DNA from: Mytilus edulis
Lineage: Eukaryota
Direction of reading: 5' to 3'
Assembly (NCBI RefSeq): GCF_963676685.1
Contig: NC_092348.1
Span: forward strand, 56,792,001 to 56,856,000
DNA length: 64,000 nt
The position numbers and the translations under genes are program-made. Within the stretch, counting starts at the first letter, position 1; each line of letters opens with the position of its first letter. The notes beneath the pieces were generated by a model, which had not been told where the DNA came from, ran no database searches, and was given only the letters and a program-made list of their open reading frames with translations. Positions 11,137 through 44,000 of this stretch are shown here, one piece after another.

Positions 11137-14100
11137 AAATTATACCAACAACCTAATCCAACGCCGTTGGAAAATGCCACACAATTATACAGAAGTCAGC
11201 TAGCTGCTAGTTTACGTGCTTTCAAACCGAAAGAGTGGCCACCTTTGAATTCACAGGAGTTGGAAACTTCGTACCTGAGGTGCAAACCAATCAACTGTCA
11301 AAACGACAGGTAAGAAACTAATAAATCTTTTATGTTTCTCATCATTTCAAATACATTCGAAAATTAAAAAAATAATATCATAATTCAGAAATTTAGCATT
11401 ACGATTGATTGAATGCACATCTAATTGCAAATGCATATACAGGATGCTTTCATATTTAACATGCAGTAAATTATTACTCGACTGTATGTTTTGCAAGTGG
11501 AAATTTAGACAGTAATATCATAAGGGATATACTTTTTACAATTTAAATCCCCAACAAATTAATAACCAATCGGTTCTTGTCCACATACACAAAGAGTTAC
11601 TCTCACAACAAGAGGCATTGAATTCAACAGTCCTTTTCTGTCTGGGCGTGTATGCGTATTTATACATCCCACAAAGCCAAATGTACGCGATCCAAATTTT
11701 GCCTTATTATTCATCAGACAATATAAAAGTGATCACTTAAATGGCATTATAAAAATAAAAGGCAGAGATAGAAATGAAATTTTGTTAGTTATAGGACCAC
11801 GTCAAGGGCATTTAAAATGAAAAAGGAGAAAGAAGATTTTTTGATACCACATTAACCAGTTCAGAGAATAACTTGATTGAATGTTGTTTGCTTAACGTCC
11901 AGCGACAAATATTTATGCATGTTCAGGACGAGAGAGTACCCCTAATGAAATTAAAATAGTACAGGAAGGGATAGCTAATTTAAAAGAGAATGAGAGATGC
12001 ATTTTGCGCACAGCGACAGTTGTCGTGAATAAAATTTAAGGGGGACATAAAATCAAAAATGAAAAGATTGAGGTATCAAGAACATTGTCAAAATGATAAG
12101 CCGATAACTGAATGTTCGATACTTTTAATGAAAACAACTTCAGTTGACTATTATATGTAATATTGCTGAAAAAAAATAATCTATTTATGTCTGTGCATCA
12201 TTGTTGCATTGCATTGGTCATTCAATTTTAATTCTATTCTCATTTTCAACACTATCATATACAATGATATATGTAATGTAATATACAATATGGAAGTAGT
12301 CTATTCTATAGAACTCGTCAATCGATAAATCTATATCTATGTCATAATTACCATAATAGTCCCAGATGGCTAATTGTCGACTAACTAGTGAAGTGAATTA
12401 TCAGATACTGAATACCTTTTATTAGTTAATTATGATATAAGCATACCTGTAGTAAGCTTATAGTTGAAGTGTACATGACGTGTTTCTGGAATAACAACGA
12501 AAATATTAATATTACAAACTCAAGTTTCGTGTAGACACATTAATAAAACATATTTACACAGCATCAATCTCATTAGTATTCGAAAAATTTAAACGTATAA
12601 TTGCTCCGAAAGAGTTTTTTTAACATTAGTTGTGACAAACAGGTTTTTCAACAATAAAACGGCATCAATCCAAAAAGGAAAACACTGAAAAATGCCCGAA
12701 ACCCGAAAAATGTAGAATCGTGTGTCCATGAATCAATAATATTCTCATTATACAACCGATTGCCTGTACATGTATAGATGATGCGGAAAACATATTTTAT
12801 TTATTTATTAACAAAATGTATTTATTATTCGCAGATTAATTAAACTATTAGACTCTTTGCCGTTATTAGTACATTTGTAAGTTTAGTTTTTTCTGCAATG
12901 CCATCGAACTATATGCACCGATAGAGGAAATGGGTTTACACATCCACGGTGGCTTCATTAAAACAATCATTTGGTTTCACTTCATGGCATCTTAAGCCGA
13001 ACAAGCACTAAAGAGGCACTGTATTGTTTTTGTGCAGATTACTTGGGGTGTATTGTATCTACAGATGACACGACTGCGTTCTGTTATTAATATTATTATT
13101 GCAAAAGACCTATATTTTCAAAAAAATGTACTACTGAAGAATGAGTTTTGTTTCAATGACATTGTAACTACATTGTAATTTGAATTGGTAATGTAAAATA
13201 AAAACATGGCAATGAATTTTATTATCACCTCTATCGTGAAATTCAGAAATGTTTTAACATGATTTTAATATTAGATAACTTTCGATTGTACTTTTTCAGT
13301 CATTCTTCTCCGCCGACCAGATGTTCTGCAAGATCAAGACCAAAATCCGTTCCGCCATCTGCGTTTAGAAATAGAGCACAGCCTAAACGATCAGATACCC
13401 CTACTGATGTCAGACCGGGTAATTTTGATTCCCTAAACCCACGTGTATTATCGCATTTACTTAATGATACATTGACTACGTCTTCGTATGGAGAAATTGC
13501 AGCAACCTATAATCAAAATGGCGATGAGAGTTCATCGAAAACTAAGGACACTAAAGATGACGACGTAAGTACAAGTGGAATTGAAAGCAACCCGACAGAC
13601 GACACAAGCAGTAGTGATGACGAAGACGATAGCGATTTTGAACCTGAAGTTGATGAAAACCGATTAGCTCCGGAGCTGTATTTAAGACCGGAGAAACTGG
13701 ATTCATTATTGTTGCCCGATTCTGCAAAGGGCTGGAGAAAATTCGATTTTGATGCAGACAATGTAAGTTATCCATATTATCCGTTTTCCAATCCATTACC
13801 TGAATCGTTTCGTGAATTAGATATGCGGCAGATTGCTCGTTTAAAATGGAATTGGCGAGATCAAACTCGACAAAGGTCACGCGAAAAAGGGGTCGATGAC
13901 ATTCTTGACAGAATGGTTGAGTTAGAACGTCTTCAGATGGAAACGGAGGACTGGGAACAAAAACGGTCTGCACAAATCAATAAACGATATTCCAAGAGGG
14001 CAATGAGTGCAAAAGTTCCTCGTGATAAACGATGTTGTGGTAAATGTTTACAACCTGCATGTACTGGAGATTGTCCCGAAAAGTTCGTGCAATCTGAAAT

Positions 14101-14605
14101 TTGTGAGCTTTGTCGGCAGCAGTTTTGTGTGAAATCTTGTGCGGACACAAAATATGAACAACGCATGCGTCAATCCCGATTAGACGATAAAATTCCTGTG
14201 CCAAAGACCCCAAATCCCAAATATTGTAAAAGTTGTCAAACAAAACACAACGCTAAACTAGTTAATGCAAATAATATTGTTCTAGGCAGACCTAAATCAT
14301 GTAATAGTACGTATAGTCGTGGTCAAGCTAGTAACAAACCAAAAGACTATCGACCTCGTTCTGATACGCCGGTATCTATAGACATGTTTCAGGAATTTGA
14401 TAAACTTGGAATTGATGCACAACAACCGGTTCGTCCAACAACAGCGAAAGTGCAACGACCGAGGAGTAGAAACTCTTCATTTCCTAGCAAATCATTTTAC
14501 TCTCAAAGAAGAGACTCATTGACAGAAGCTGACAAACATAGATTCAAAAAGAAATCCCAGAAAAATAGTAAAGTGTTAGTTCGACGACCAAAAACAGCAG
14601 TATAG
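11137..14605 (+). CDS. FAM217-like protein with a Cys-rich segment; exons 11137-11309 and 13300-14605, start codon not identified
   Basis: 448-aa ORF with an acceptor (ttttcag) at 13299. The upstream 173-nt exon joins in phase (…QND-S-HSS…). The segment PELYLRPEKLD…YYPFSNPLPESFRELDMRQIA…ILDRMVELERLQMETEDWE matches my recollection of the FAM217 core (PPDLNLRAEEID…YYPNFLPSPFSSWDLRDMA…IDRLIQLEWLQVQTVQCE). Confidence 0.7.
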
Positions 14606-16071: not shown

Positions 16072-17624
16072 TAATTATGTAGGTGACATTCGTGAATGAG
16101 GGGTCGGGATTGTGGTTATCGATTGTTCGTCGCTTTAATATTATTTGTTTTTTAAACTTCTGGATGAATCTTTGTTTATATTTGATGCCTAGCAAACCAA
16201 TCCAAAATCTCGAAAAACTTATACCACAGTCTTTAGAAAACCTGTGGATGAATATGTTAAATAGAAAATACAAGAATTTGAAAAATAATCGTCATTTTTC
16301 TGGTAATAATTTGGTGAAATGAAGACGTCTAACACCAGCGTTTATTTAAGATGTTGATTTTTTTTAAATTTAAAAACAAATTGGAAAAAGGTAGAAAATT
16401 CAAAGATTGAACTAGAGATTTTCGTTAAAACAGTCGCACGAATATGCTTATCATGGTACCGTTAACGCTCGACAATGTCTATTTGAAAAAGGTTATATGT
16501 TGGACGGATCTAGTCGTCTTTGAAGAACATGATTGGTGTACCTTTTTGTAAGTTTTAGTTGTTGCATTGCTGTCTTAACGTCATATACATTCTACATAAC
16601 AAAATTTCCATACCAAGTCTGGAATATGACAGTTGTTATCCATGGGTATGATGTGTTTGAGCTTTTGATTTAGCTATTTGATTAGGGACTTTTCGTTTTG
16701 AAAAATCCTTGGAGTTCGGTATTTTTGTGATTTTACTTTTAAAAAATTAAAAAAAATTAAAAACTTGTTTTCTTCCCGAATCTTCGCCCACGCTTCGTAT
16801 ATTGTTCTAGCCTATATTTATTCTCAAAACAGAAACAAAAAACAACGAGAAACTTTAATTTTATCTTTATATACTTGGTAGTATGAGGCGTGTTCAGACG
16901 TTTAATCACAGAAAATCTTATTTAGTACATACAAAGCAAATAAATAAATTAAAAGAAATTATATCTAATTGTTTGATCTCATTGATAAATGAAAAATGTT
17001 GAAAGAGATCACAAAAGGTAATAAATGCATTAAATGTGTTACCACTTCACAACCTACTATTGTGAAGAGAGAGACATATCTCTTGCACGTTACAGACACC
17101 CTTGTAGATTTCGAAAAAGAGCAGGCTAATGCCGCTACAAGGTAGCACTCGGACCCGCAAAGTGGAAAGGGATTAATGATAATCTTTATTGCAAAATTAC
17201 ACCACTAATGGTCAAACAATCCAAACAAACAAATATATACATTTTAAAAACAATGCAATACAATGAAATACAATACAACATAAAATAAAAGAACGTATTT
17301 TAAAAGTTCAATTATAAATTTATGTATAACACACAATCACGAGTTTGTCTGACATGGGTCTGACCCCCTCAGTTCTAAAGACTGCTTAATGAAGACTCCA
17401 ATATGACAAACAAGTTCAGGAATGGGTTAAAAATGTGTTTTAGTTTACTAAATTCATCAAGATGTTGAAATGATGGTACATAGTCTTTCAGATAAGCCAA
17501 AAAATTCGACCGCAATGATATGTTAATGTCACAATACATATAAGTTGCAAAACTTGTTTCCCAATCCACTATAAATAATTGTGTTTAAATTAACCTTCTA
17601 TTGTTGGTCAACTACATTCAGGAT

Positions 17625-19196
17625 CTATTTATTTATGGTATTTGTTACTACGGCTACTAATATACCAACAACAATAACGCACAAAACTAGCACTACAGAC
17701 AATGAACAAGGCATTGCACAAAACGTTTTCTGCGGCACTCGATACGTATGGCTCAGACCCAGTAATTCTTTAAATGGCCCAACACAATCAGAATCCAATG
17801 TGTCAAACTTTTTATACATTCCTTTTAAATCCTGGAGCATGTTTCGAAAAGCACTCTCAGCTTGAAGAAATGTATCCATACTTAATCTGCTATATAGATT
17901 CTTTTTCGACTTGTTACAACCAAAAGTACAATTAAGGAACATTTCATGAACCCATGGATTTCCGTAGAAAAAATGGGGAAGATTGCGATTTTCAATGCAC
18001 AATTCAAGAAATTGCAGAAAATATCCAAGTGCTTCTTTTACTCCTGACAGTGACTTAGTCTTGCTTGGAACAGTCAGTAGAGCAATACAATGAAAACATA
18101 CGTTTTTCAAGTAGTAGGAAACAGCAACACGATGTAATTGATTTGTGTTACGACGATTTGATTTCATCCAAGCGACATAAGATTTAACGATACGACATGC
18201 GGTCATCAAGTAACGTTGACTTGGATTTCTGCGTCCAACGTCAATGATATGTTTTTCATATCCACAAGTAGATTCCCGCCAGAGATATTCATGGTCAACT
18301 GTCCGTTCAGATTCGTCTAATCTGTGTGCCCATTTCATCACTCCATAGACTGTACACGTCATTTCCGAATTGGCATAAGTGACTCGATTTACTGTAAACG
18401 GATTGGGAACATAATCCGTACGTAACACCAATGAAGGAACAAAATCAATATCCAGCGTTGGCAAATGTCCATAATTTGCCTGGAACGATTCATTTAGACC
18501 TTCCAAAGTGACATTACTGTATAGATTGGAAGCATATGATATTTCTCTGTCTAGACTTATACGTATCGGGAAGGTCGGTGGATTAACAGAACGACGAAAT
18601 GTATAAACAGTCCTATCACCGTACGGTAACTGCTCATATACTTGTTCTCGAGTTTTGTCAAGTATCGATTTGAAAACTTTTTCCTGTAAGTTTTTTGTAT
18701 TTATGAAATAACTTGAATAATACGAGCCTGTTTTTGTGAAAATCTCATTCCGTTTCAACCATGGATAGTTTCTTAGCAAATATTCTGGGTTTTCAACTCG
18801 TAATTTTATTAGCTCGACTATTTCCTCTCCAGAATAATCGTAGACCGGACATTCTGTCACTTGCATGCCTTCTATTTCAAATTTAACTAAACAGTCAAAC
18901 TCCAAGGCGTCATTAACTCTCAGTCCTTCCCTTGCACTTCCTTGTCTTACATTGCCATGAATAATTAGCCCTTTAAATTCCTCCCGTGCGTACTTTTTTA
19001 ATCCGTCCAAAACTGTACCAAGAACGGAATCGGCTGCAGAGCTATGGACATCCCACTTAGAATTACTTATATTTATGTCTTTAAGATATCTATCTTGTAA
19101 AATTCGTCGCTGGAGATCATCTTCACCTGGGCCTACTGTAAAGACAGGATACCGCCAAGCATTAAGGTCATCTCCAATTTTTTCGTTAGTCGCCAT
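17625..19196 (-). CDS. cGAS-like receptor (cGLR, Mab-21/nucleotidyltransferase family) with a C-terminal transmembrane tail; intact, single coding exon, ~523 aa
   Basis: NTase signature QGSAREGLRVNDALEFDCL (hGS…E-h-D), third acidic residue in LDIDFVP, Mab-21 C-lobe motifs WRES…YEK, SYYLKN and LPHFFYGNP…NLY, and a hydrophobic end LSVVLVLCVIVVGILVAVV. A splice acceptor at 19206-19208 precedes the ATG at 19196. Confidence 0.9.
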   Translation of the reverse strand: MATNEKIGDDLNAWRYPVFTVGPGEDDLQRRILQDRYLKDINISNSKWDVHSSAADSVLGTVLDGLKKYAREEFKGLIIHGNVRQGSAREGLRVNDALEFDCLVKFEIEGMQVTECPVYDYSGEEIVELIKLRVENPEYLLRNYPWLKRNEIFTKTGSYYSSYFINTKNLQEKVFKSILDKTREQVYEQLPYGDRTVYTFRRSVNPPTFPIRISLDREISYASNLYSNVTLEGLNESFQANYGHLPTLDIDFVPSLVLRTDYVPNPFTVNRVTYANSEMTCTVYGVMKWAHRLDESERTVDHEYLWRESTCGYEKHIIDVGRRNPSQRYLMTACRIVKSYVAWMKSNRRNTNQLHRVAVSYYLKNVCFHCIALLTVPSKTKSLSGVKEALGYFLQFLELCIENRNLPHFFYGNPWVHEMFLNCTFGCNKSKKNLYSRLSMDTFLQAESAFRNMLQDLKGMYKKFDTLDSDCVGPFKELLGLSHTYRVPQKTFCAMPCSLSVVLVLCVIVVGILVAVVTNTINK

Positions 19197-20439
19197 GTAA
19201 AACACCTAAAATAAAAAGAAATCAAGAACTTAGATAAAAATAAAACTAGAAGGTTTAAAACGATATTCATGCACTCGTCAATACAATAATTATAAGAGGT
19301 TATTTCTTAAATTATCCTTCAGCCAATAACCATACGTCTCATGACTTTCAAAAGGCAATTACCGGACACCAGTGATCGTTGTAGTCAATCAACATAGTCG
19401 TCTTGAGATATTTTTCCTTGTTGAAGCAAAATAATTCATTTGATTACTGTACTCAAAACATCTTATACAAATGAATGTTCCTTCGTTGGTTTGATCGCTA
19501 TTACATTGTGTATTGGTCATTTTTTTTTTTTTTTTACAAAGCACATATCATGTCCGCAAATTGAGTCATATCACTATGGGAAGTCATAATCACGGGTTGA
19601 CTAATATTCAGATCTACTGAAAAGCCTTTTTTCTGGCTCCTAAAGAATATATTTGGTACATTTAATAGGCCAAGTAGACCCCAAAATGTACCATGTTTAT
19701 CACATTTTCCTGAGGTCTATCAAGCTTTTTGAAAAGCCAACACTTTTCTACTTTCGATTTCGGTTTACTAAAATTGCTATTGAATATGTAAAATGCAGTT
19801 GTAATATGATAACATAGTATTGTTAACTATACGCTATTAAAAGATATTAGGCAAACAAGGCAGTAGATTAGTTACCTTATTATCATCTAATGTATCTTTG
19901 TAGAGATATTGAAGTGCAACTCATTACTAATAATGACGTGTAACTGGAAAATATGCAGAAACGACTCGAGCGCCATCTATCGATTAGCAAATTGAAAGTT
20001 AATATTATCTTTTTACATGTGTACTTAAGGATACGCGTGTACAGGTGTAGAACTCGAAGCATCAGAGAGGCGTTTTCGAAATTATTTCATGGTTATTTTC
20101 TTCGTCTGATAAACACACATTTAACAGGATAATGACTGTTAATACACAAATATTTATACATTGCTTATATATATTCAACATTCAGGTTATCTTTATAGAA
20201 CCATATTTATACTGCTTCATAATTGTTAAAGTTTCAATATTGGTTTTGAATTCGGTAATTCCGACTCCGTTGCTGTTAGTTTAACACTGAACTTGTTTCT
20301 AACAAATCGGAATGGCATACATGAATACTAGTATAAGTAGCCAGAATGTTATCATATAAACTACACTTATAAATTTGTGTTGTTGGTACCATTCTGACCT
20401 GCAGTCTATTTAAAGTTGTAGCATTAAAAAATAATTTAA

Positions 20440-21200
20440 TATGATGTATGTATCAGGTCCACCTTTGAAATTTTACTAAATTCTTCCATACATGTTAAGT
20501 ATTGGCTTTGAAGTTTGGTTGTACTTGTAGAAAACATATTTCAAACAGAATAGAACATTTTAATTTTTACGGAGATGTTGTTTACCGAGACCTGAAATTT
20601 GGAAACGATCCAGGTAAACGAACTGATCCTTCAAATAAACTTTATGTTCTAATATGTTACCAATTCAGCACTGTAATTAGATCTTTGAATCTTTAATATT
20701 TTAGTCTTAGAAGCATGCTATTTTTTAATTAGTTGCTTTGGCTTTGAAATAGCTGTCAGTAACTGCGAGCAAATTTGCACTAAGTGTCTTTCTGTTCTGT
20801 GAATGTACCCGTAAAAGTACCCGTAAAAGTACCCGTCCATTCACTCTGTGCTTTTGTTAAATGTATTTTTATGTGTATCCATCTGATGGGTTAAGCCTTT
20901 TTCAACTAATGTGTATTGTTTGTTTTCATGTTGTACTGTCATAAAACTGTCCAATGTGAGGAGGAGGGTTTGTGCTTTCAAACGAGTGTAATCCCGTAAC
21001 CGGCATTCAGTATGTGCCCAAGTAAGGAAGACTGTTATACAGTTTTCTCGTCTGAATTGTTTTATATTAAACAGTGTCATTTCGGACCTTTTATAGCTTA
21101 CTATGGTTGACGCATTGTTGAAGGCCGTAGGGTGACCTATTGTTATTAATTTCTGTGACATTTTGTCTCTTATGGAGAGTTGTCTCATTGCCGTCTACAT
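20440..21200 (+). mobile_element. Degenerate 3' remnant of the same Penelope-like family
   Basis: Decayed RT C-terminus (FTKFFH…KFGCTCRK…FYGDVV…TVIRSLN) followed by the same 3' sequence (…tagctgtcagtaactgcgag…gagagttgtctcattg). Confidence 0.65.
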
Positions 21201-21775
21201 TCTATATTCGTACATAGTTAATTATCAAATAAAATTGTTTAAGTAAGTACCCATTCTTATTGTCATTAAAGCTAGTTTTCCAGGCTTACATTTGCGGATT
21301 CAGGGGCTTAGAGGTCGTACGTCTACCTTGGATTGGGAAATATATATCATTTATTGGCATGAAATCTTCTAAAAATGTTCGACTCTCGCTACGCCCAGCA
21401 ATATTTATTTAGTGAAATCAAATAACGCTTCCTTTGAAAAATATCCTAAATCCGCCCCCAGTTCAAGATATTTCATAGACTAGAATTTTTATTTAATACA
21501 TGACATGTGGATCAAAATAATTTATAAATTATTTTAATTTCATCTATCATGTACAAAAAAATGTATATGTAAAGAGTATGTGGCCTGAAGTACATAAGAT
21601 GCAAGTTTCCCCCCCCCCCCCCCCCCCCCCCAAATATATATATTACATGTAACATCTAATTAACAGAATGGCAAAAAGTAAATATGTAATCCCGTAGTTA
21701 GAACAGATTACAAAAGTGTTTAATAATAAGGAATGCGTTCCAATTTTACAATAATGCACTGATGGTGAACTAAGA

Positions 21776-23353
21776 TTAGGACTCCGTTGCGTCACGTGTT
21801 AGTAAAGTTACTAATATTCCAAAAACAATAACGCACAAAACAAACCGTGCACACGATGAAATAGCCTCAAAGTTACTGATAGCTTTCTCTTGCACTCGAT
21901 ATTCATGCGTAAGACCAAGTAATTCTTTGAATGGCCCAACACGGTCAGGATCCAATGAGTCAAATTCTGTAAACAATCCGTTTAAATCTTGCAGCATAAT
22001 TCGAAAAGCTCTTTCGGCATTCGTGAATGTATTCTTACATATTCTTCCGTATAGGTTCTTTTCCGGCTTATTACTTCCAAATGTGCAATTAGGGAACATA
22101 ACATGAACCCATGGATTACCATAGAAAAAATGGGGAAGATTGCGACTTTTTATGCATAATTCAAGAAACTGCAGAAAATATCCGAGTGCTTCTTTTACTC
22201 CTGAAAGTGATTTGGTCTTGCTTGGTACAGTCAGTAGAGCAATACAATGAAAACATATATTTTTCAAGAAGTACGAGACAGCTACACAATGTAATTGATT
22301 GGTTTCTCGACGATTCGATTTTATCCCCGTGTGACGGTGTCATAAGATTTGACGATACGACATGCTGTCATCAAGTAACGTTGACTAGGATTTCTTCGTC
22401 CAACGTCACTGATAAGTTTTTCATATCCACACGTAGATTCCCTCCAGATAAAAACACGATCAATGGTTAGTTCAGATTCATGTAATCTGCGTTCCCATTT
22501 CATCACTCCATAAACTGAGCACGTCATTTCCTTCTCGCCATTTCTATTGTTCACTGTATACGGATTGGGGACGTAGTCCTTACGCAATAATAATGCAGGA
22601 ACAAAATCAATGTCCAACTTTGAAAGATATTCCCTTTGACCCGGGCGTTTGGCACTTTCACGTGATACTTGTGTGTACAAACCGCCGGCATATGATATTT
22701 CCCGGTCTAAACTAATTTGTATCGGGAACGATGGTGGTTTAACAGACCGTCGATATGTATAAATTGTTCTATCGTCTGGCGGCAATCGATTAAAGATATG
22801 TGCACGAGTTTTGTCTAGCAATGCCATGAACACTTTTTCTTGTAAATTTTTTGTATTAATATAGCAATGTGTATCATGTAATCCTGATTTTGTAAAAATC
22901 TTATAGCGGCGCAACCACGGATAGATTCTTAACAAATATTCTGGATTTTCGACGCGTAATTTAATGAACTCGGGCATTAGCTCTCCAGAATAATCGTAGA
23001 CTTGACATTTTGCCACCTGCATGCCTTCTATTTCAAATTGAACTAAACAGTCAAACTCTAGAGGATCATTTACTTTCAGTCCTTCTCTTGAACTTCCTTG
23101 CTTTAGGCTACCATGAATAATTAATCCTTCATATTCCTTATTTGCATATTTTTTTAATATGAGCAATATTTTCTCAAGAACAGAATCAACCGCAGAGCAA
23201 TGTTCATCCCAATCATTATCAGTTATATTTATGTTTTCAAGGTATATATTCTGTAAAATTCTTTGCTTGAGATCTTCTTCTTCTGGGCCAACAGTAAACA
23301 CAGGATATCTCCAAGTATTAAGTTGATTCTGCAATTTTCTCATCAGCAGCCAT
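21776..23353 (-). pseudogene. Second tandem cGLR paralog disrupted by two frameshifts (+1 near 23327, +8 at ~22324-22343)
   Basis: ORFs 22321-23397 and 21776-22267 are colinear with the intact paralog (QGSSREGLKVNDPLEFDCL, DIDFVP, LPHFFYGNP, TM tail). The homologous ATG at 23353 reads MAADEKIAEST*. Between SY and KSNRR there are 20 nt versus 12 nt in the paralog. Confidence 0.8.
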
Positions 23354-23820
23354 TGGAAAACTGAAAATAAGATAAAAAAAATATATAATATTAGCAAACC
23401 TTTTATTACTTAGATATAACCATCCTTAGATCAAGTCTGGCTTTTAGCTGGGTCCGTTAAACGTTCATTTGTTACACTTTACCTAGGAAAATGTAGACTC
23501 TTATAATGATAATATGATTGTTTTTAAAAGGATGTTATTTAATATCCTGTATGGATATCAAAAAAGTAAAACCACATAAATACTGAATCCGACGAAGTTC
23601 AAAACGGAAAGTTCCTAATCAAATGGCAAAATCAAAAGCTCAAACACATCAAACGAATGGACGACAAATGTGACATTTCTTTCTTGGTACAGGCATTTTC
23701 CGTAGTACAAAATGGTGGATTAAACCTGGTTTCATAGCTAGGAAGCTAAATTGAGGTGAGAATCATAACTATGCACGTGTACTCCAGTGCCACATATTGA
23801 CTATTAAATGAATTGTCCTA

Positions 23821-24221: not shown

Positions 24222-24559
24222 TCCAGTGCACGATGTTTTGTCGATATTGTCAACATCGCAATGTCAACTTTATAGTGTTTACATTGTATCCTATACCTTT
24301 CTGTTAACATCGTTCACATCGTATACATCGGGATGTTGACAATATCGTGTCGAAATCGTGTTTATATTGTATATATATATAGAGTCTATAGCTTTCTGTT
24401 TACATCGTTCACATCGTATGCATCGCGATGTTGACAATAACGTGTCAACATCGTGTTTATATTGTATATATAAATATATAAAGTCTATACCTTTCTGTTA
24501 ACATCGTTCACATCGTATACATCGCGATGTTGACAATATTGTATCAACATCGTGTTTAT

Positions 24560-24644
<85 letters not shown>

Positions 24645-25179
24645 TCTATAAATTTCTGTTTACATCGTTCACATCGTATACATCGCGATGTTGACAATAT
24701 TGTATCAACATCGTGTATATATAGAGTCTATACCTTTCTGTTTACATCGTTCACATCGTATACATCGCGATGTTGACAATATCGTGTCAACATCGTGTTT
24801 ATATTGTATATATACAAGTCTATACCTTTCTGTTTACATCGTTCACATCGTATACATCGCGATGTTGACAATATTGTGTCAACATCGTGTTTATATTGTA
24901 TATATATATGTAAAGTCTATACCTTTCTGTTAACATCGTTCACATCGTATACATCGCGATGTTGGCAATATTGTGTCAACATCGTGTTTATATTGTATAT
25001 ATAGAGTCTATACCTTTCTGTTTACATCGTTCACATCGTATACATCGCGATGTTGACAATATCGTGTCAACATCGTGTTTATATTGTATTTATATATATA
25101 AAGTCTATACCTTTCTGTTTACATCGTTCACATCGTATACATCGCGATGTTGACACTATTGTGTCAACATCGTGTTTCT

Positions 25180-25253
<74 letters not shown>

Positions 25254-26997
25254 AAGTCTATACCTTTCTGTTTATATCGTTCACATCGTATACATCATGA
25301 TGTTGACAATATTGTGTCAACATCGTGTTTATATTGTATATATAGAGTCTATACCTTTCTGTTTACATCGTTCACATCGTTCACATCGTATACATCGCTA
25401 TGTTGACAATATCGTGTCAACATCGTGTTTATATTGTATTTATATATATATAAAGTCTACACATATATAAAGTCTATACCTTTCTGTTTACATCGTTCAC
25501 ATCGTATACATCGCGATGTTGACAATATCGTGTCAACATCGTGTTTATATTGTATTTATATCTATATAAAGTCTATACATATATAAAGTCTATACCTTTC
25601 TGTTTATATCGTTCACATCGTATACATCGCGATGTTGACAATATTGTGTCAACATCGTGTTTATATTGTATATATAGTGTCTACACCTTTCTGTTTACAT
25701 CGTTCACATCGTATACATCGTAATGTTAACAATATAGTGTCAACATCTTGTTGTTGTATATACATTTTTGTTTCGTTCTTTTTTTTTTTAAATAAGTTTA
25801 GCAGTTAGTTATATAGTTAAAATTGTTTTCCATTTTTCATGTCGGCGTCTTTTATTGTTAACTATGCCATATAAACTTCAATGTTAAAGGCCATACGGTT
25901 ATATGTGCCAGTTAGTATGTATGTCCTGGAAATTTTACTTATTTGCAATCATACCACTTCTTTTTTTATATATATCTTTCTGTTTAAATTGTTCACATAA
26001 CAATGCTAACAATATTGTGTCAAAATCGTGTTTATATTTTATATTGAGTCTATGGTACGTATATAAACGTTAAACTAACTGCATTTGTTTGCACTTGTCC
26101 TTAGTCAGGAATCTGTCGTTCAGTAGTTGTCGTTTGTTGAATTGTTCATCCGTGTTTTTGGTTTCATGTTTTTTACATTAGACCTTTATTTTTCCTGTTC
26201 AAATAGTTTTACACTAGTGTTTTTGTGCCTTTCATAGCTTGCTACTCTATAAAAACCAAAACTTCGTATTAATGACAAACCTATAGGGGTTTACTTATAA
26301 AAAATGTAACTTAAATAAAAAGTTGTCTCATTTGAACTTATACCGCATCTTCTTATATGTATACATCGCTATGTTAACGATGTCAACGATGTAAACAATA
26401 TATAAGAGTTCAAACAATGTTAACGAAGTTGACTAGATATCGGTTTAATATTGTGTACATCGCGATGTTAACGATGTCAACGATATAAACAATAGATAAG
26501 AGTTCAAGCAATGTCAACGATGTTCACACGACATCGTGTTAACCTTGTAAACATCAGGATGTTAACGATGTCAACGATGTAAACAATATATAAAAGTTCA
26601 AACAATGTCAACAATGTTGACACGACATCGTGTTTACATTGTATACATCGCAATGTTAACGATGTCAACGATGTAAACAATATATAAGGGATCAAACAAT
26701 GTAAACGATGTTGACACGACATCGTGTTAACATTGTAAACATCGCGATGTTAACGATGTCAACGATGTAAACAAAAATATAAGAGTTCAAACAATGTCAA
26801 TATCGTTGACACGACATCGTGTTTACATTGTATACATCGCAATGACACAACATCGTTTTAACATTGTATACATCGCGATGTCAACGATGTATACATTATA
26901 TAAGGGTTCAAACAATGTAAACAATGTTGACACTATATCGTGTTAACATTATAGATATCGCAATGTCGACAATATTGAATAAACATCCTTCACTGAA
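24222..26997. mobile_element. Non-autonomous TIR (CACTA/EnSpm- or foldback-like) element built from inverted satellite-like arrays
   Basis: The left end gtccagtgcacgatgttttgtcgatattgtcaacatcgc is roughly the reverse complement of the right end gcaatgtcgacaatattgaataaacatccttcactgaac. ~90-bp units (acatcgttcacatcgtatacatcgcgatgttgacaat…) with (TA)n expansions span 24240-25750, and a related inverted array spans 26360-26990. Confidence 0.7.
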
Positions 26998-34068: not shown

Positions 34069-37000
34069 TCAATGTATCAACACTGATTTAATGTAACTGA
34101 TAGACACACCATGGTTTATAATGTCCACATGTCCAATTCCTTGAAATGCTTTCGAGTGGAATGGCTGTGTTTGAAGATGTTTCCATGGCAAGCAACCCTC
34201 GAGACTTCTGATATTAACAGTTTGGTCGCCATCTTCATCTACAGGTTTTGGTCGTTTGTCCGGAAATGCGCCTTCTTCATAGACCCATTTAGCTGTAGTA
34301 TTCAAACCGTTTCCATAGAGACAATGGACTTCTACATTCGGGGGCCTCAATGGGTTGACCAAACCTTCCACATCTTCTCTCATTAAAAACCCATCTGTAA
34401 AGTTAAGGTCTTTGAAGAGCTGTTGGTAATCGTTCACAGTGTAGTTCCGTCTAGGTGTTTGGATTAAAACCTCAGCCTTGTTCCAAAACTGATTGGTCGG
34501 CATAAGGAAGGCGGAGCTTGTCATGGAGCGTTGCATTGGACGAGCTTTTAATGCTGCAACTGTTATGATGTTTATATTGTCTCCTGAAAAAAATATTCGA
34601 ACAATTAAGGTCAAACGCTGAGGTTGTAACATATTGTCGTTGAAAATGCTTAAAATAGTCACAAAACTGCAACTTACACATGTACGAGTTCCTTAAGATA
34701 CCTCAACAAATAAATTAGGGAAAACAAATATTCGGTAGTTAAGCAATGTACTGTTCACAGAACATGGTCTGCTCAGTAATCTTTCTGGAGCAACTGCGAT
34801 CACTCCGACTTTAGACGTGGTTCGTGATTTTAATTCAGTAGTCTTCAATGTTGTGTTTTGGACACTGTTGTTTGTCTTTTCAAGCATCGTTTTTTTCTCT
34901 CTTGGCAGTGTCAGTTTTTCTTGAAAGAATGATTTTTTTTATTGTCCTTTAATTTCTTCTATCTCTTTTAAATATTGAATGAAATATTACTAAAACACAG
35001 CATGCATTTAACTAAATGTATTGATGAATTTACTTAAATATATATGGATTATATTGCAATAAATGATTATTTTTCAATCTTTACCAGAAACAATCATCCT
35101 CAAGGCTTTGACACTCCCTCCCCACGGTGCACCAAGTGTTATAAATGATCTGATGTATTTGTCCTTCCATTCCTGACTTTGATGGTTAAGAAAGTACAGT
35201 ATCACCAAGTTTCCTAAGCTGTGGGCTAAAAGAACAACTTTTGTGTTGTTGTTCATGTAGTATGTTTCTTCTACCAGCTTTGTCAAATTTGTATAATAGT
35301 CTTCCAGCTCATCTGAAATTGAGAGTCGTGTAATTTTCCGTAATTTTTGCTTTAAAATATGAAACTTTGTGAAATTAAGATTGCTCATAAGGAAACGCAT
35401 TTCATCGACTCAGATCATTGAACAGGAGCAGCATATGCAAGAATAAGATTCTTTATTTGAACCTGTGTGAAAATTTACCTTGACCTCCGGCAGTTGAGGC
35501 CGACTTCGATATTTTAACGTTAGTACACGTTTAGTCCCATGAAAAAATTAGATACATAATTGTCATTTCCTCAGCACGTGCCAAATACACAGTCGATGTG
35601 TTTTTATTTCTAAGTTTACAATTTCTTGGATCCAAGTTTATTGTAGTACGACGTTTTTATTTTGTAAAGTTTTTCCATTTTTTATTCATTTCTCAAATTA
35701 TGAATTATTAATTTGCTTTCAAAACATTTAAATGATTGGAGTTTTTAACCACCTTGACTTGCTATACAGCCCTCACCTCTTCGGCCTGACTTGCGCCTTT
35801 TTGGGGCATTTAAAATAAAAAAATTTATCATAACATAATTGTAATTTAAATTAGGACTGTCTTAGTAAAATGATACAAGGCAAAAGATTGTGAATGCTTC
35901 TATTAGTTTGTGTAGTCTTCTTATCCATTGACTTACTTGGTGATCTTCTAAAATCGTATGCAGCACCTCTTATAGTTTTATTCCGAACATATCCCCATTT
36001 TACCATGTTCTCTGCTAGTTCGTGGAAGTAACCAACTGAAGAAAAAAAAACGTTATTTTCATGAGAACTGCATTGTTAAACATATACTAGCATAAAGATA
36101 TCACCTCGAAGAAATATCAAGTGGCCGAAGAATTCATAAAAACTGTGGGTTGCAACTATGACATTGTGTTATGGTTATTTTTGTAACTTAGTATTTCGTT
36201 TTTGCTTTAATATGTACTTTGTGTCTAGAGTGTAAATATACCATTTTCTTTTTCTTGGCCCCTCTTTCTTTGTTGAAATGGTTTTTGTTTTACAGTGATT
36301 AAGATTCTTACAATGTTGACTGCTGTATCATAATATTTGACATTTTTACCAGACTGAGTTTAGGTTTAATCCACCATTATCTACATGAGGAAATGCCTGT
36401 ATCAAATCAGGAATATGACATTTGCTTTCCATTCGTTTGGTGTGTCTCACTTTGAGCTTTTGACTTTGTCATTTGATAAAGGACTTTCCGTTTTAAATTT
36501 TGCTAATAAAAATGTTATTTTAGCCAACCTAGATCACGAAAGTTTAATTTTTAATTTTTTTTTTTATAAAAGAAACTGTTTGAAAGATGACATCTTACGT
36601 TTCGCCAAATGAGTGTCGCTTAACCATTCCACACTATCTGTACCACCAAATCCAGGTACCCGTATGTCAACACCCTCTGGGTAACTGGTTCTATGCGTCT
36701 TGTTGTTATATACTAATCTAAAACATATATAATGAATATTTTCATTAGTATTTTCTGGTAATAGCGGTCATTATTATCATGTTAGGTATGTCTTTGACAT
36801 AATCGAATTGGAATATTAAAAGAAAAGAACCCATTGGCAAACTGAAACATAGGAAAAACAAACAGCAGTACTGTAGTATTATTTATACTAAATAGTAAAA
36901 TAACAAAAATACCTAACTCCGAGGAAAGTCAATTGGCAAAATCAAAAACTCATAAACATCATACGAATTGATAACAACTATTATATTCCAGACTTGGTAC

Positions 37001-41048: not shown

Positions 41049-44000
41049 CTATTTGATCAAAATGCTTTTGATGTAATCTATTACAACATCCTCTTTCAGC
41101 ATATCTAGATGTTTAATTCCATGAAATTGCTTCGAATCAATAGGCTGTTTCTGAAGCGTTTTCCAACGTAGGCAACCTTCTAAACTTCGCAGAGAAACTG
41201 TATGGTCGCCATCTTCATTTATTGGCGTTGGCTGTTTGTCTGGCCACTCATCTTTTGTGTATACCAAGGTTTTGGCAGTTAGTAACCCAGAGCTGTATAA
41301 GCAGTGTACCTGGACATTCGGAGGTTTCATTGGATCTATTAAGTTCTCTGTGTCTTTCCTCATAAAATATCCATCGGGAAAATTTATATCTGTAAAAAAC
41401 TGTTTATAATCATTCACAGTATAATTTCTTGTCGGTGTCTGAATCAGAACTTCAGTTTTATTCCAAAACTGGTCTGAAGGCAACAGAAAAGCAGAACTTG
41501 GCATTGATCGTTGCACTGAACGTGCTCTTAGAGCCTTTACTGTCGCAATGTTCATATCGTCACCTAAAAAATATAGAGAATCACAATTATGATTATTGTT
41601 CGTGAACATTCAAAAGACGTATGTCTATTTACTTTATAGATATAAACTCGTCCATGTGTGTGTGTTTGTACACAGTGCTTTTAAAACGAAAAATGTCTGA
41701 ACCGTATTTCTAATTTTAATGAAGGTTGGCATCTAGAGATTGTAGTTATTGTAAGTTACTGACAAATTGAAACCGATTTTTTTATATGTTTTCCCTCTTT
41801 CTAAATTTGTATATTGGTGTTGTATCTGTCTGCCATTTTTACATCTTTTAAGAAAAAATATTGTTGAAACTAGGATTCTTGTCAAAAATTTGCATTTCAA
41901 TTGGTACTTTTGAATTTTTTGAAAAGGGTGGTACGTTTTAATGTTTTTCCCCGGTACGAATTCATTAAGTGGAATGTTTGTTAAAATTGTATATATATTT
42001 ACTAGTTTTTGGTGGTAAGACTAAAAGTATCAGTTCAAGTATTTACAGATTCATCTTGTTTCAAAATCGAATTTATTCTCGGTTTGTTTGCATACGGGCA
42101 ACAACAGAACTGTAGCTAATCTTGTTCGAATTTATTCTTTTTATTTGCATATAAATACAACAGCTTACAGTAGGTTACATTTACTAGAAACATGAATGAG
42201 GTACATATAATTAATAAAAATATCAAATACCAGACGCCTGCATCTTGATAGTTTTGACACTACCTCCCCATGGCGCAGATAAAGTGACGAAAGATCCAAT
42301 GAATTTGTCCTTCCATTCCTGGGGTTTCTGGTTAAGAAAGTAGAGTAACACAAGGTTACCTAAACTGTGACCTAAAAGCACAACTTTACTGTTGTTGTTG
42401 ATAGTGTATGTATCTTCTACCAGCTTTGTAAGTTGTGAATAATAACCACTCATTTCGTCTGAAAACAAAGTTAAGATTTTTAAAGTGATATAACACGTGT
42501 TTTTGAAATCGTAATTTTAATGAAATTATTGAACTAATGCAAAAAATTGAGAATGGAAATGGGGAATGTGTCAAAGAGACAACAACCCGACCATAGAACA
42601 GACAACAGCAGAAGGTCATCAAACAGGTCTTCAATGCAGCGAGAAATTCCTGCACGCGGAGGCGTCCTTCAGCTGGCCCCTAAACAAATATATTATTCTA
42701 GTTCAGTGATAATGAACGCCATACTTAACTCCAAATTGTACACAAAACCCTAAATAAAAAAATAATACAAGACTCTAACAAAAAAAGGCAGCGGCTCCTG
42801 ACTTGGGACAGGCGCAAAAAATGCGGCGGGGTTGAACATGTTTATAAGATCTCAACCCTCCTCCTATACCTTGTATGTTTGCTAAACTAATATGAGTTTT
42901 CTATGCACGGTTTTGTACATTTATTTTGAATCCATAACATATAATCGACAATTTTTCTTTTAGTTTCAACAGTATTTTTATTCAAACAAACTGAATTGGA
43001 TTGACCAATAGGCTGCTGCAAAGTCTATGTAAGCCCTCTCCATAAAACATGGAACAATATATTACATTCAAACAGGCACAAACACAATGGCAACACACAA
43101 TTAATTTGAAATAAAGTTTAATTTAGTGAAAAGTGTGTCTGCTTATAAACTTTCGTGTTTTATTGCCAAGTTTTACTTATTCAAAACTTACGTTAACAAT
43201 CAACAAAAAAACCCATTAAGCACGTGAAAATTTTTATTGCTTTTATTTCCTCTCACGAGGTAATCAGGAGAAATAACGTTCAAACCACACACATATTGAA
43301 AGAGTCTTTCAAAATTAAAATAAGAAGATGTGGTATGATTGTCAATTAGACAACTATCCACATAAGGTCAAATGCAGTGGCGGATCCAGAACTGTTTGTA
43401 AAGGGGGCCCCTGACTGACCTGGGGTCGCGCTAGTCACACTTCAGTGATTCCCTATATAATCAACCAAATGTTTTCCCCGGGGCCCGCCTGTGCAAACAC
43501 TGCAGAAAATAGATATAAGAAGATGTAACATGAGTGTCAATGAGTGCCAACTCGCCTTCAAAGTCACAATTTAGATGTAGACTAAATGATCAGCAAAGGT
43601 AAATGTGAATGTCATATTTCAAAATTTGATCAAAAAACGAGAAAAAACGAAAACTTTTTTTTCAAATTTTGAATTATTAAGTGCGGTTATTCTGATGTAT
43701 TGCTATCACATAAATTTCCATTATGCAAATTAGTTTTGGGTTTACAACCGATCTACAAAAAGAGTGCACACGCTGAAATGTCTCGCCTTATTTACTAATC
43801 ATTGATATAATGTTGATAGTCCTAAATATAAAGCTTTATTGCAACTGTCACATAAACTTAACATTTACCAAGAAATCTAAACATAGACCAATGAACCATG
43901 AAAATGAGGTCAAGGTCAGATAAACCATGGCAGACAGGCATGTACAGATAACAATTCTGCCATACAACAAATATAGTTGACATATTGCTTATATTTTGAG

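What the first reader, a model, noticed from the sequence alone, without database searches (positions are those of the whole stretch)
17625..23360. Tandem cGAS-like receptors with a conserved C-terminal membrane tail anchor
Seen in sequence: both paralogs keep the full NTase catalytic set (GS…EFD…DID), lack the cGAS zinc thumb (no H…CC…C after YEK), have no signal peptide, and end in a hydrophobic helix followed by only 6-7 residues (LSVVLVLCVIVVGILVAVV-TNTINK at ~17646-17702; FVLCVIVFGILVTLL-TRDATES). Established: characterised cGLRs are soluble nucleic-acid sensors that make cyclic dinucleotides, and the membrane-bound Mab-21 relatives I know (MIEF1/2, ITPRIP) are anchored near the N-terminus and are catalytically degenerate. 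Inference: a catalytically competent tail-anchored cGLR subfamily on the ER, mitochondria or peroxisomes could make second messenger next to STING or at viral replication membranes. I know of no described example of this architecture.
Basis: partly seen in the sequence, partly recalled or inferred. Interest (0 to 1): 0.8.

Follow-up and report, generated by a model that had tools for sequence, protein, structure and literature searches.

The report
Membrane-anchored cGAS-like enzymes in mussels
A mussel gene encodes a cGAS-like signalling enzyme that keeps its catalytic residues and ends in a membrane-spanning helix, its neighbouring copy is broken, and relatives in oysters and scallops carry other kinds of membrane anchor, which suggests an immune sensor family that works on membranes.

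Summary
The window is from a Mytilus genome, by the names of the closest proteins. Copy 1 (17625-19196, minus strand) is an intact single-ORF gene of 523 aa. It belongs to the Mab-21/cGLR superfamily: a profile of its family hits cGAS structures at E 1e-8. It keeps the QGS, ExD and D catalytic residues, which are invariant in 41 relatives. It has no zinc thumb and no N-terminal hydrophobic segment. It ends in a 19-residue, very hydrophobic helix (17646-17702) followed by 6 residues.

Copy 2 (21776-23353) is not intact. It carries a 1-nt and an 8-nt frame-breaking insertion relative to copy 1 and to its 523-aa M. galloprovincialis orthologue. dN/dS is 0.27 on both sides of the 8-nt break, so the decay is recent.

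The C-terminal helix is present in 12 of 18 mytilid relatives. Oyster and unionid relatives instead have N-terminal helices. Scallop relatives have CaaX ends, four of them also with MGxxxS starts. In all, 29 of 55 full-length relatives have a predicted anchor. This mirrors the OAS family.

Nine full-text paper searches found no membrane-anchored cGLR. Verdict: a real feature and a new variant of a known kind.

The parts
17625..19196 (-). Copy 1: intact single-ORF coding sequence, 523 aa plus stop, of a Mab-21/cGLR-family nucleotidyltransferase
   Evidence: ORF. ATG located. 100% identical to P0001. Family profile hits cGAS at E 1.1e-8.
18894..18941 (-). Copy 1 codons for G86-S87 through E99-F-D101: the GS loop and the first two metal-binding acidic residues
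   Evidence: Invariant columns G86, S87, E99 and D101 in 41 sequences. They align with the GS..EFD of mouse cGAS in the alignment. Coordinates computed from the ATG at 19196.
18444..18446 (-). Copy 1 codon for D251, within LDIDFVP: the inferred third catalytic Asp
   Evidence: D251, V253 and P254 are invariant in 41 sequences. Position checked. The assignment to the catalytic role is by motif. It was not covered by a PDB alignment stretch.
17646..17702 (-). Copy 1 C-terminal transmembrane helix, LSVVLVLCVIVVGILVAVV
   Evidence: Sequence read. KD19 3.43. 0 of 5000 shuffles reach it, and 0 of 174 other open frames reach 3.0.
17628..17645 (-). Copy 1 six-residue tail after the helix (TNTINK), predicted to face the lumen
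   Evidence: Sequence. Topology is inferred.
19206..19207 (-). Possible splice acceptor AG after a pyrimidine-rich tract, 9 nt upstream of the ATG. The same arrangement occurs in copy 2.
   Evidence: Sequences. Inference only; no read evidence.
22321..23353 (-). Copy 2, N-terminal piece, from the ancestral-type ATG at 23353 to the premature TAA at 22323..22321. It keeps QGS, EFD and DIDFVP.
   Evidence: The source's own gene model for this locus, P0007, is a truncated 350-aa protein.
23322..23332 (-). Copy 2: stretch holding a 1-nt insertion that shifts the frame after codon 8
   Evidence: Frame 0 from the ATG stops after 11 residues. Frame 1 continues with the conserved QLNTWRYPVF. Compared with orthologue P0004 and with copy 1.
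22326..22340 (-). Copy 2: stretch holding an 8-nt insertion relative to copy 1, which shifts the frame
   Evidence: DNA alignment A1, columns about 1167-1174. Sequence.
21776..22339 (-). Copy 2, C-terminal piece: an open frame of 187 aa in the other frame, 72% identical to copy 1 residues 344-518
   Evidence: open frame extended to 22339. dN/dS 0.268 over 175 codons.
21800..21844 (-). Copy 2 hydrophobic tail FVLCVIVFGILVTLL, followed by TRDATES and the stop
   Evidence: Sequence. Orthologue P0004 has the same tail at KD19 3.0.

Best explanation
Copy 1 encodes a tail-anchored member of the Mab-21/cGLR nucleotidyltransferase superfamily. It has about 495 residues of cytosol-facing enzyme domain with an intact GS/ExD/D active site and no zinc thumb. 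A single, very hydrophobic C-terminal helix holds this domain on an internal membrane.

The membrane is most likely the ER. This is inferred from the high hydrophobicity of the helix and the short, nearly uncharged six-residue tail. The targeting rules for tail-anchored proteins that I apply here are recalled, not tested.

The likely role is a membrane-resident sensor that makes a nucleotide second messenger close to STING or to membrane-bound viral replication sites. This would be analogous to membrane-anchored OAS enzymes.

Copy 2 is the tandem sister gene. The duplication is older than the split from M. coruscus. In this assembly copy 2 is a young pseudogene or a null allele, with two frame-breaking insertions.

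Shown here:
- the gene structures;
- family membership by profile;
- conservation of the catalytic residues;
- the strength of the hydrophobic helix against controls;
- conservation of an anchor across the clade;
- purifying selection.

Inferred, not shown: topology, compartment, enzyme activity, ligand, and link to STING.
For: Family membership
- A profile of 41 relatives hits 40 PDB sequences at E up to 10. 36 are named cGAS, plus 4jlx, 8gjy ('cGAS-like receptor 1') and 7lt2 ('Mab-21 domain-containing protein'). The best is E 1.1e-8. The GS..EFD of the family aligns with that of cGAS.
- 27 of 41 members match PF03281 and 23 of 41 match PF20266.
- The ESM Atlas best cluster is 'Cyclic GMP-AMP synthase family protein', score 0.93.

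Active site
- G86, S87, E99, D101 and D251 are invariant in 41 sequences.
- 54 of 55 relatives of at least 440 aa keep GS..[DE]x[DE]..DxVP.

Anchor
- KD19 is 3.43, with 0 of 5000 shuffles reaching it and 0 of 174 other open frames reaching 3.0.
- No N-terminal hydrophobic segment.

Conservation of anchoring
- 12 of 18 mytilid-clade proteins have a C-terminal helix. These include both paralogue lineages in M. edulis, M. galloprovincialis and M. coruscus, plus M. californianus and Logan contigs.
- The helix sequence differs in the more distant paralogues (P0006, P0011) but stays hydrophobic.
- Other anchor types occur in the same clade. 9 of 14 oyster and 3 of 8 unionid proteins have an N-terminal helix followed by Lys/Arg. 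5 of 5 scallop proteins end in CaaX, and 4 of those start with MGxxxS.

Selection: dN/dS between copy 1 and copy 2 is 0.27 over 332 codons and 0.27 over 175 codons.

Genome context: STING ligand-binding-domain matches over the Pfam cut-off at 5 places.

Expression hint: two runs on record as RNA hold 0.65 and 0.58 of the sampled words of 17400-19400.

Precedent for the logic: OAS1 p46 with a CaaX box, mouse Oas1b with a C-terminal transmembrane helix at the ER, and myristoylated OAS2 (PMC13372824, passages).
Against: - Copy 1 alone does not reach Pfam's threshold. It matches only PF20266, at 22.1 bits against a cut-off of 24.1, and has no PF03281 hit.
- The distance between the second and third acidic residues is 147 residues. 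The published cGLR motif gives X50-90.
- The third Asp was not covered by any PDB alignment stretch.
- 6 of 18 mytilid-clade and 26 of 55 clade proteins have no predicted anchor. One own-genome paralogue (L004, the same protein as P0010) ends just before the place of the tail.
- The tail itself evolves faster than the rest: dN/dS 0.57 over 38 codons, which is a noisy estimate.
- The pI of the soluble part is only 7.5-8.4. Li et al. report higher pI for nucleic-acid-sensing cGLRs (passages).
- The helix prediction rests on a hydropathy scale, not on a trained predictor.
Confidence: 0.7

Rival explanations
1. This is a membrane-bound Mab-21 scaffold or adaptor of the MiD49/51 (or ITPRIP, TMEM102) type. 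The nucleotidyltransferase fold binds a nucleotide or a partner on an organelle surface and makes no second messenger. It would not be an immune sensor.
For: - MiD51 is a membrane-anchored nucleotidyltransferase-fold protein without a zinc thumb (PMC3926961, passages).
- Oyster and unionid relatives have the MiD-like layout of an N-terminal helix, a linker and then the fold.
- An ITPRIPL2 cluster is among the Atlas hits, at rank 9 with score 0.91.
- Copy 1 has a PEY tripeptide about 36 residues after D101, seen by direct reading.
- The soluble-part pI is modest.
Against: - MiD51 has lost its catalytic residues and keeps a single Asp. This clade keeps all of them: they are invariant in 41 sequences and present in 54 of 55.
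- The family profile hits cGAS and cGLR entries, and no hit is named MiD49/51, among 40 PDB hits at E up to 10.
- The PEY tripeptide is not conserved in the wider clade (consensus; L003 and L004).
Confidence: 0.15
2. The hydrophobic end is not part of the working protein. Transcripts would end or splice before it, or it would be a recently read-through 3' region. On this reading the protein is a soluble cGLR.
For: - No read-level evidence could be obtained.
- Some gene models of close relatives stop just before the tail: P0005, P0010 and P0012.
- The tail has the highest dN/dS of the gene, 0.57.
Against: - The tail lies in the same uninterrupted ORF as the enzyme.
- It is kept in frame in both paralogue lineages at dS about 0.6-0.8.
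- It is present in database proteins of M. galloprovincialis (P0052, P0004), M. coruscus (P0002, P0054) and M. californianus (P0008), and in Logan contigs of 1.7-1.8 kb that hold the whole 523-aa frame (P0003, P0055, P0056).
- A core LCVIV.GI.VA is shared by the two lineages.
- 0 of 174 other open frames in the window end this hydrophobically.
Confidence: 0.1
3. Lumenal or secreted orientation: the C-terminal hydrophobic stretch is a GPI-attachment signal or a type I anchor, and the Mab-21 domain lies outside the cytosol.
For: A hydrophobic C-terminus preceded by small residues can be a GPI signal. This is general knowledge, recalled.
Against: - That route needs an N-terminal signal peptide. 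The highest KD19 in residues 1-480 is 1.33, and the N-terminus is polar and acidic.
- In the oyster and unionid relatives the N-terminal helix is followed by Lys/Arg and preceded by acidic residues. By the positive-inside rule (recalled) this places the enzyme domain in the cytosol.
Confidence: 0.03

Closest known systems
cGAS-like receptors (cGLRs) as defined by Li et al. 2023 (bioRxiv 10.1101/2023.02.22.529553; passages read)
   Same: - Mab-21 fold family by profile.
- QGS, [DE]h[DE]h and h[DE]h residues present.
- Homology over both the nucleotidyltransferase core and the C-terminal helical part.
- No zinc thumb, as in most invertebrate cGLRs.
- It comes from a bivalve with a very large Mab-21 repertoire: at least 149 PF03281 matches in this genome.
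   Different: - It has a C-terminal transmembrane helix.
- There are 147 residues between the second and third acidic motifs, against the published X50-90.
- Copy 1 alone is below Pfam thresholds.
- The paper's main text names TPR, ANK, death-domain and tandem cGLR fusions. Its two uses of 'transmembrane' concern STING. Its Tables S1/S2 could not be seen and may list these proteins.
Membrane-anchored OAS enzymes: OAS1 p46 (CaaX), mouse Oas1b (C-terminal transmembrane helix, ER), OAS2 p69 (N-myristoyl). PMC13372824, passages read
   Same: These are nucleotidyltransferase-fold innate immune sensors tethered to internal membranes. The method of attachment differs between relatives. The bivalve clade shows the same three kinds of anchor: C-terminal helix, CaaX and MGxxxS.
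   Different: It is a different family, Mab-21 rather than OAS, and no OAS domain hit was seen. Oas1b is catalytically inactive according to that paper, whereas the mussel protein keeps its catalytic residues. The function of the bivalve proteins is untested.
MiD51/MiD49 (MIEF1/2). PMC3926961, abstract and passages read
   Same: A membrane-anchored protein with a cGAS-like nucleotidyltransferase fold and no zinc thumb. The oyster and unionid relatives share the N-terminal position of the anchor.
   Different: The MiD51 anchor is N-terminal and its catalytic acidic residues are lost. Copy 1 is anchored at the C-terminus and keeps them. No hit named MiD was returned by the family profile.
Vertebrate cGAS
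   Same: Best PDB matches, at E 1e-8. GS..EFD aligns, and a second aligned stretch covers the C-terminal helical domain.
   Different: No zinc thumb, no long disordered basic N-terminus, insertions in the core, and a membrane helix.

Membership tests
cGLR (criteria of Li et al. 2023) | Active-site residues h[QT]GS ... [DE]h[DE]h ... h[DE]h present | tested here: met
   Q85-G86-S87, E99-F-D101-C and I250-D251-F in copy 1. G86, S87, E99, D101 and D251 are invariant in 41 relatives. There are 11 residues between GS and EFD, which is within X8-20.
cGLR (criteria of Li et al. 2023) | Spacing X50-90 between [DE]h[DE]h and h[DE]h | tested here: not met
   Residues 103-249, that is 147 residues (numbering). 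The family has insertions in the core. No alternative h[DE]h lies at the published distance (direct reading).
cGLR (criteria of Li et al. 2023) | Sequence homology across both the nucleotidyltransferase core and the C-terminal helix bundle | tested here: met
   The profile aligns to cGAS in two stretches, profile positions 37-120/168 and 326-403. PF03281 is matched in 27 of 41 members and PF20266 in 23 of 41. Copy 1 alone matches only PF20266, below the cut-off.
cGLR (criteria of Li et al. 2023) | Predicted structural homology to known cGLR/CD-NTase enzymes | not testable with these tools
The Atlas holds no model of this protein.
cGLR | Ligand-activated synthesis of a nucleotide second messenger | not testable with these tools
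   Needs biochemistry.
Tail-anchored membrane proteins | A single transmembrane helix at the extreme C-terminus with only a short segment after it | tested here: met
   A 19-residue helix with KD19 3.43 ends 6 residues before the stop. It is the only window at or above 1.6 in the protein.
Tail-anchored membrane proteins | No N-terminal signal sequence | tested here: met
   The highest KD19 in residues 1-480 is 1.33. The N-terminus is polar.
Tail-anchored membrane proteins | Post-translational insertion and membrane residence | not testable with these tools
   Needs cell biology.
MiD49/51 (MIEF) | N-terminal anchor and loss of the catalytic acidic residues | tested here: not met
   The anchor is C-terminal and the catalytic residues are kept. 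None of the 40 PDB profile hits is named MiD.
Vertebrate-type cGAS | Zinc thumb (His/Cys cluster) between the core and the C-terminal domain | tested here: not met
   Between YEK (313-315) and ACRIVK there are about 17 residues with no His/Cys cluster (direct reading of the translation). That this feature defines the group is recalled; its role in cGAS is mentioned.

The most novel reading that the evidence does not exclude
A whole bivalve-specific clade of catalytically intact cGLRs works as membrane-resident sensors, and the anchor has been swapped between lineages. Mussels use a C-terminal tail anchor, in some paralogues expanded to several helices. Oysters and unionids use an N-terminal signal anchor with juxtamembrane cysteines. 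Scallops use N-myristoylation plus C-terminal farnesylation. This would be convergent with OAS1 p46, Oas1b and OAS2. It would mean that cyclic-nucleotide immune signalling in these animals is started on organelle membranes, next to STING or to viral replication organelles, rather than in the bulk cytosol.
Probability: 0.35. Interest if true: 0.8.

Novelty: new variant of a known kind. Interest (0 to 1): 0.62.

Why it matters
Characterised cGLRs are treated as soluble sensors. Their published domain survey relied on conserved-domain metadata, so it could miss transmembrane helices and lipidation motifs.

A clade that keeps its active site and also keeps membrane attachment by interchangeable means points to spatial control of cGLR signalling as a selected trait. 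For the OAS family this is known to decide which viruses are sensed.

The finding gives concrete constructs to test: full-length protein against tail-less protein, and chimeras carrying the scallop CaaX or the oyster N-terminal helix. It also suggests a reason why some invertebrate cGLRs have no known ligand in solution assays.

Finally, it shows that strict motif spacing and Pfam thresholds can leave real family members uncounted.

Tried and rejected
No model and no fold search followed. The fold claim rests on profiles only.
- **The look-up of encoding contigs** for P0003, to see whether its contigs are transcripts: closed.
- **Single-sequence PDB search** with the Pinctada relative P0017: 0 hits at E up to 1. 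Only the 41-sequence profile reaches cGAS.
- **Second word-based protein search**, with the alignment: 49 proteins, all from the same bivalve clade (weakest E 5e-88). It did not bridge to other cGLR clades, so the clade's place in the cGLR tree is unresolved.
- **The large representative search** was not run, because the claim does not rest on an absence of relatives.
- **Earlier findings of the scan**: two unrelated notes on this window, and nothing on cGLRs.
- **GPI-anchor and secreted readings**: rejected, because there is no N-terminal signal.
- **Assembly error as the cause of copy 2's break**: judged unlikely, because there are two independent insertions in non-repetitive sequence. It could not be tested with reads.
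- **MiD-like adaptor reading**: kept as a rival at low weight.
- **Isoelectric point as a clue to the ligand**: values of 6.0-8.9 across the clade, not decisive.
- **Nine paper searches** found no membrane-anchored cGLR. Subscription journals and supplements were not searched. Tables S1 and S2 of Li et al. may bear on this.

Full report
**What is in the sequence**

The region holds two head-to-tail genes on the minus strand, in AT-rich animal DNA of 30-36% GC.

Copy 1 is one uninterrupted open frame, 17625..19205. Its ATG is at 19196. The 523-aa product is letter for letter the database protein P0001, which lies on a 97-Mb contig. The closest named relatives are from Mytilus coruscus, M. galloprovincialis, M. 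edulis and M. californianus. The window is therefore from a Mytilus genome. The truncated gene model of copy 2 (P0007) is named M. edulis and sits on a contig of the same length.

Copy 2 appears in the ORF list as two frames, 22321..23397 and 21776..22267.

**Copy 2 is broken**

A DNA alignment of the two genes has 86% mean column identity. It shows an 8-nt insertion in copy 2, within 22326-22340. The insertion shifts the frame and gives a TAA at 22323..22321. The downstream frame stays open from 22339 to the stop at 21776, and still encodes the hydrophobic tail.

A second lesion lies at the start. From the ancestral-type ATG at 23353, the frame reads eight residues identical to the M. galloprovincialis orthologue P0004 and then stops. 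The conserved QLNTWRYPVF continues in the +1 frame. This is a 1-nt insertion within 23322-23332.

The source's own model for this locus (P0007, 350 aa) borrows an upstream start and ends at the premature stop.

dN/dS between the two copies is 0.271 over 332 codons before the 8-nt break and 0.268 over 175 codons after it, with dS 0.63-0.77. Both halves were therefore under purifying selection for most of their history, and the damage is recent. I read copy 2 as a young pseudogene or a null allele. I could not test the assembly with reads. Two independent insertions in non-repetitive sequence make an assembly error unlikely.

**What family it is**

- Copy 1 on its own only touches Pfam's Mab-21_C, at E 1.7e-4 and 22.1 bits against a cut-off of 24.1. 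It does not hit the Mab-21 nucleotidyltransferase model.
- A word-based search found 50 relatives among 5453 candidates. All that carry a name are from bivalves.
- I aligned 41 of these 50, leaving out P0005 and eight fragments or short models (P0007, P0015, P0030, P0032, P0046, P0048, P0049, P0050). G86, S87, E99, D101, D251, V253 and P254 are invariant.
- A profile of that alignment hits 40 distinct PDB sequences at E up to 10. 36 are named cyclic GMP-AMP synthase, one of them as a fusion. The others are 4jlx, 8gjy 'cGAS-like receptor 1', 7lt2 'Mab-21 domain-containing protein', and one unrelated receptor at E 1.1. The MiD51 paper cites 4jlx as cGAS.
- The best hit is E 1.1e-8. The printed alignment puts the family's QGS..EFD on the GS..EFD of mouse cGAS. 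A second stretch covers the C-terminal helical domain.
- No hit is named MiD49/51.
- 27 of the 41 members match PF03281 and 23 match PF20266.
- The ESM Atlas places copy 1 nearest a chordate 'Cyclic GMP-AMP synthase family' cluster (0.93), then mollusc and arthropod Mab-21 clusters (0.92). An ITPRIPL2 cluster is at rank 9.

By profile, this is a divergent clade of the Mab-21/cGLR superfamily with a complete catalytic set.

**Against the published cGLR criteria**

I tested it against the criteria of Li et al. (passages).

- The residues are all present, and the first spacing (11 residues) fits.
- The second spacing is 147 residues, where the motif allows 50-90.
- The PDB alignments did not cover the third Asp, so D251 is assigned by the invariant DxVP motif.
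- There is no His/Cys cluster between YEK and the following helix, so there is no zinc thumb (direct reading).

**The tail**

The last 25 residues are a 19-residue helix (17702..17646) and then TNTINK.

- The Kyte-Doolittle mean of the helix is 3.43. It is the only window at or above 1.6 in the protein. The rest of the protein peaks at 1.33.
- 0 of 5000 shuffles reach 3.4, and 33 reach 2.5.
- Of 174 other open frames of at least 60 aa in this AT-rich window, 23 reach 1.6, 1 reaches 2.5 and 0 reach 3.0 in their last 30 residues.
- With no N-terminal hydrophobic segment, this is the anatomy of a tail-anchored protein with the enzyme in the cytosol.
- A GPI or secreted reading fails for lack of a signal peptide.
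- The helix is preserved in the copy 1 orthologues (P0052, P0002) and in the copy 2 lineage (P0004, P0003, P0054-56). They share a core LCVIV.GI.VA, which includes a small-xxx-small pair.
- dN/dS of the tail is higher than that of the rest: 0.57 over 38 codons, a noisy figure. This fits a segment selected mainly for hydrophobicity.
- The high hydrophobicity and the short, nearly uncharged end point to the ER rather than to mitochondria or peroxisomes. This uses targeting rules that I recall and did not test.

**The wider clade**

This is what changed my view of the finding.

I built a tree of 47 rows: 45 database proteins and two own-genome open frames. Eleven were left out as fragments or near-duplicates (P0007, P0015, P0030, P0032, P0046, P0048, P0050, P0051, P0053, P0055, P0056). 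The tree was a quick search with SH-aLRT support.

- It gives a mytilid clade (99) that contains a copy 1 plus copy 2 clade (100).
- Each copy lineage includes an M. coruscus sequence, so the tandem duplication predates that species split.
- The pair also shares one contig in M. coruscus and one in M. galloprovincialis.

I then tallied all 55 proteins of at least 440 aa fetched. 16 shorter ones were left out, as listed. 54 of the 55 keep GS..[DE]x[DE]..DxVP, and 29 have a predicted membrane anchor:

| Group | Predicted anchor | Count |
|---|---|---|
| Mytilid clade | C-terminal helix | 12 of 18 |
| Oysters | N-terminal helix | 9 of 14 |
| Unionids | N-terminal helix | 3 of 8 |
| Scallops | CaaX end (CLLM, CILM, CMVM) | 5 of 5 |
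| Other or unassigned | none | 0 of 10 |

- Four of the five scallop proteins also begin with MGS(T/I)WS, an N-myristoylation-type start.
- The N-terminal helices are preceded by acidic residues and followed by Lys/Arg and often Cys. By the positive-inside rule (recalled), this again puts the enzyme in the cytosol.
- Some oyster entries differ only by having or lacking the N-terminal helix, for example P0021 against P0018 and P0023. This may reflect alternative first exons.
- On the tree the anchor labels need 9 changes, against a shuffled mean of 19.9. Near-copies inflate such clustering, and the root is not known, so I claim neither an ancestral state nor an order of events.

Against the picture:

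- 26 of 55 proteins show no anchor, and some of these are surely incomplete models.
- One own-genome paralogue (L004, the same protein as P0010) stops just before the place of the tail. Only hydrophobic remnants follow its stop codons.

**How it most likely works**

The nearest precedent is the OAS family, the structural cousins of cGAS. The EMBO J 2026 paper (PMC13372824, passages) says three things:

- OAS1 p46 needs CaaX prenylation to sense coronaviruses and picornaviruses on internal membranes.
- Mouse Oas1b is held at the ER by a C-terminal transmembrane domain.
- OAS2 p69 needs N-myristoylation.

It comments on the plasticity of the attachment method.

The bivalve clade shows the same three solutions on a cGLR scaffold. 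I therefore propose that copy 1 is a membrane-resident sensor-enzyme, probably at the ER. On this reading its product acts on STING, whose ligand-binding domain is encoded at 5 or more places in this genome. Tethering would either place the sensor at membrane-bound replication sites or raise the local concentration of the signal.

None of this was tested. The ligand is open: the pI of the soluble part is 7.5-8.4 in the two copy lineages.

The main rival is a MiD51-like adaptor role. It is disfavoured because MiD51 has lost its catalytic residues (PMC3926961), whereas this clade has kept them invariant.

**Expression**

- 20 listed runs from 9 studies hold at least half of the sampled words of 17400-19400. 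Two are on record as RNA, with shares 0.65 and 0.58. The coding sequence makes up 79% of that stretch.
- This is a hint of transcription. It is not proof, and it says nothing about the 3' end.

**Novelty**

Nine full-text searches found no paper describing a transmembrane or lipid-anchored cGLR:

- cGLR with transmembrane, bivalve or domain terms;
- tail-anchored;
- membrane-anchor and lipidation terms;
- Mytilus with cGAS or Mab-21.

In the Li et al. preprint the two uses of 'transmembrane' concern STING. Its domain survey used conserved-domain metadata and names TPR, ANK, death-domain and tandem fusions. The choanoflagellate cGLR preprint and Culbertson and Levin also use the word only for STING (passages).

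Supplements were closed and subscription journals are not in the library, so a prior description cannot be excluded.

I file the finding as a new variant of a known kind. It is a cGLR-superfamily enzyme with a membrane anchor, in a clade where anchoring recurs by different means.

**Verdict**

- Function is still inferred.

Noticed in passing
L003 (G000:C8:63973854-63978332), minus strand; also P0008 and P0009: A paralogue on another chromosome encodes the same cGLR-like domain followed by about 160 residues. These hold four or more strongly hydrophobic segments and an internal duplication of a roughly 75-residue unit. This would be a multi-pass membrane tail rather than a single anchor. A neighbouring copy (L005) is a pseudogene with a similar tail.
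   Followed up: partly
L004 (G000:C8:64129678-64134165), the same protein as P0010: This paralogue's frame stops right where the tail would begin. Short hydrophobic remnants follow behind two stop codons. This may be a recent loss of the anchor.
   Followed up: partly
Whole genome G000: At least 149 places match Pfam Mab-21 over its cut-off (150 of 510 candidates were scored). Many lie in open frames of about 650-700 aa that match only profile positions about 123-196. One cluster of about 12 copies lies at C6:80.72-80.78 Mb. The two genes of this window are too divergent to appear in that list.
   Followed up: no
window 34069-34662 and 41049-41609, minus strand: Two similar open frames match the C-terminal half of Pfam LCAT (E 2.7e-20 and 1.5e-18). 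They are probably last exons of tandem LCAT/phospholipase A2-like genes.
   Followed up: partly
window 13259-14605, plus strand: A 448-aa open frame matches Pfam FAM217 (E 3.3e-8, over the cut-off). It is the nearest neighbour gene on the side beyond copy 1's stop codon.
   Followed up: partly
window 51200-54886, plus strand: A 1228-aa Lys/Glu-rich open frame with internal repeats and no Pfam match at E 0.01.
   Followed up: partly
P0024 (Saccostrea echinata, 662 aa): This oyster relative has a long N-terminal extension without a hydrophobic segment. The extension contains a GDGNC-type motif. It may be a fused gene model or an added protease-like domain.
   Followed up: no
window 24290-25410: Open frames full of YI repeats and repeated '[10 protein letters not shown]'-like units on both strands. 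These look like microsatellite or satellite DNA, not genes.
   Followed up: no
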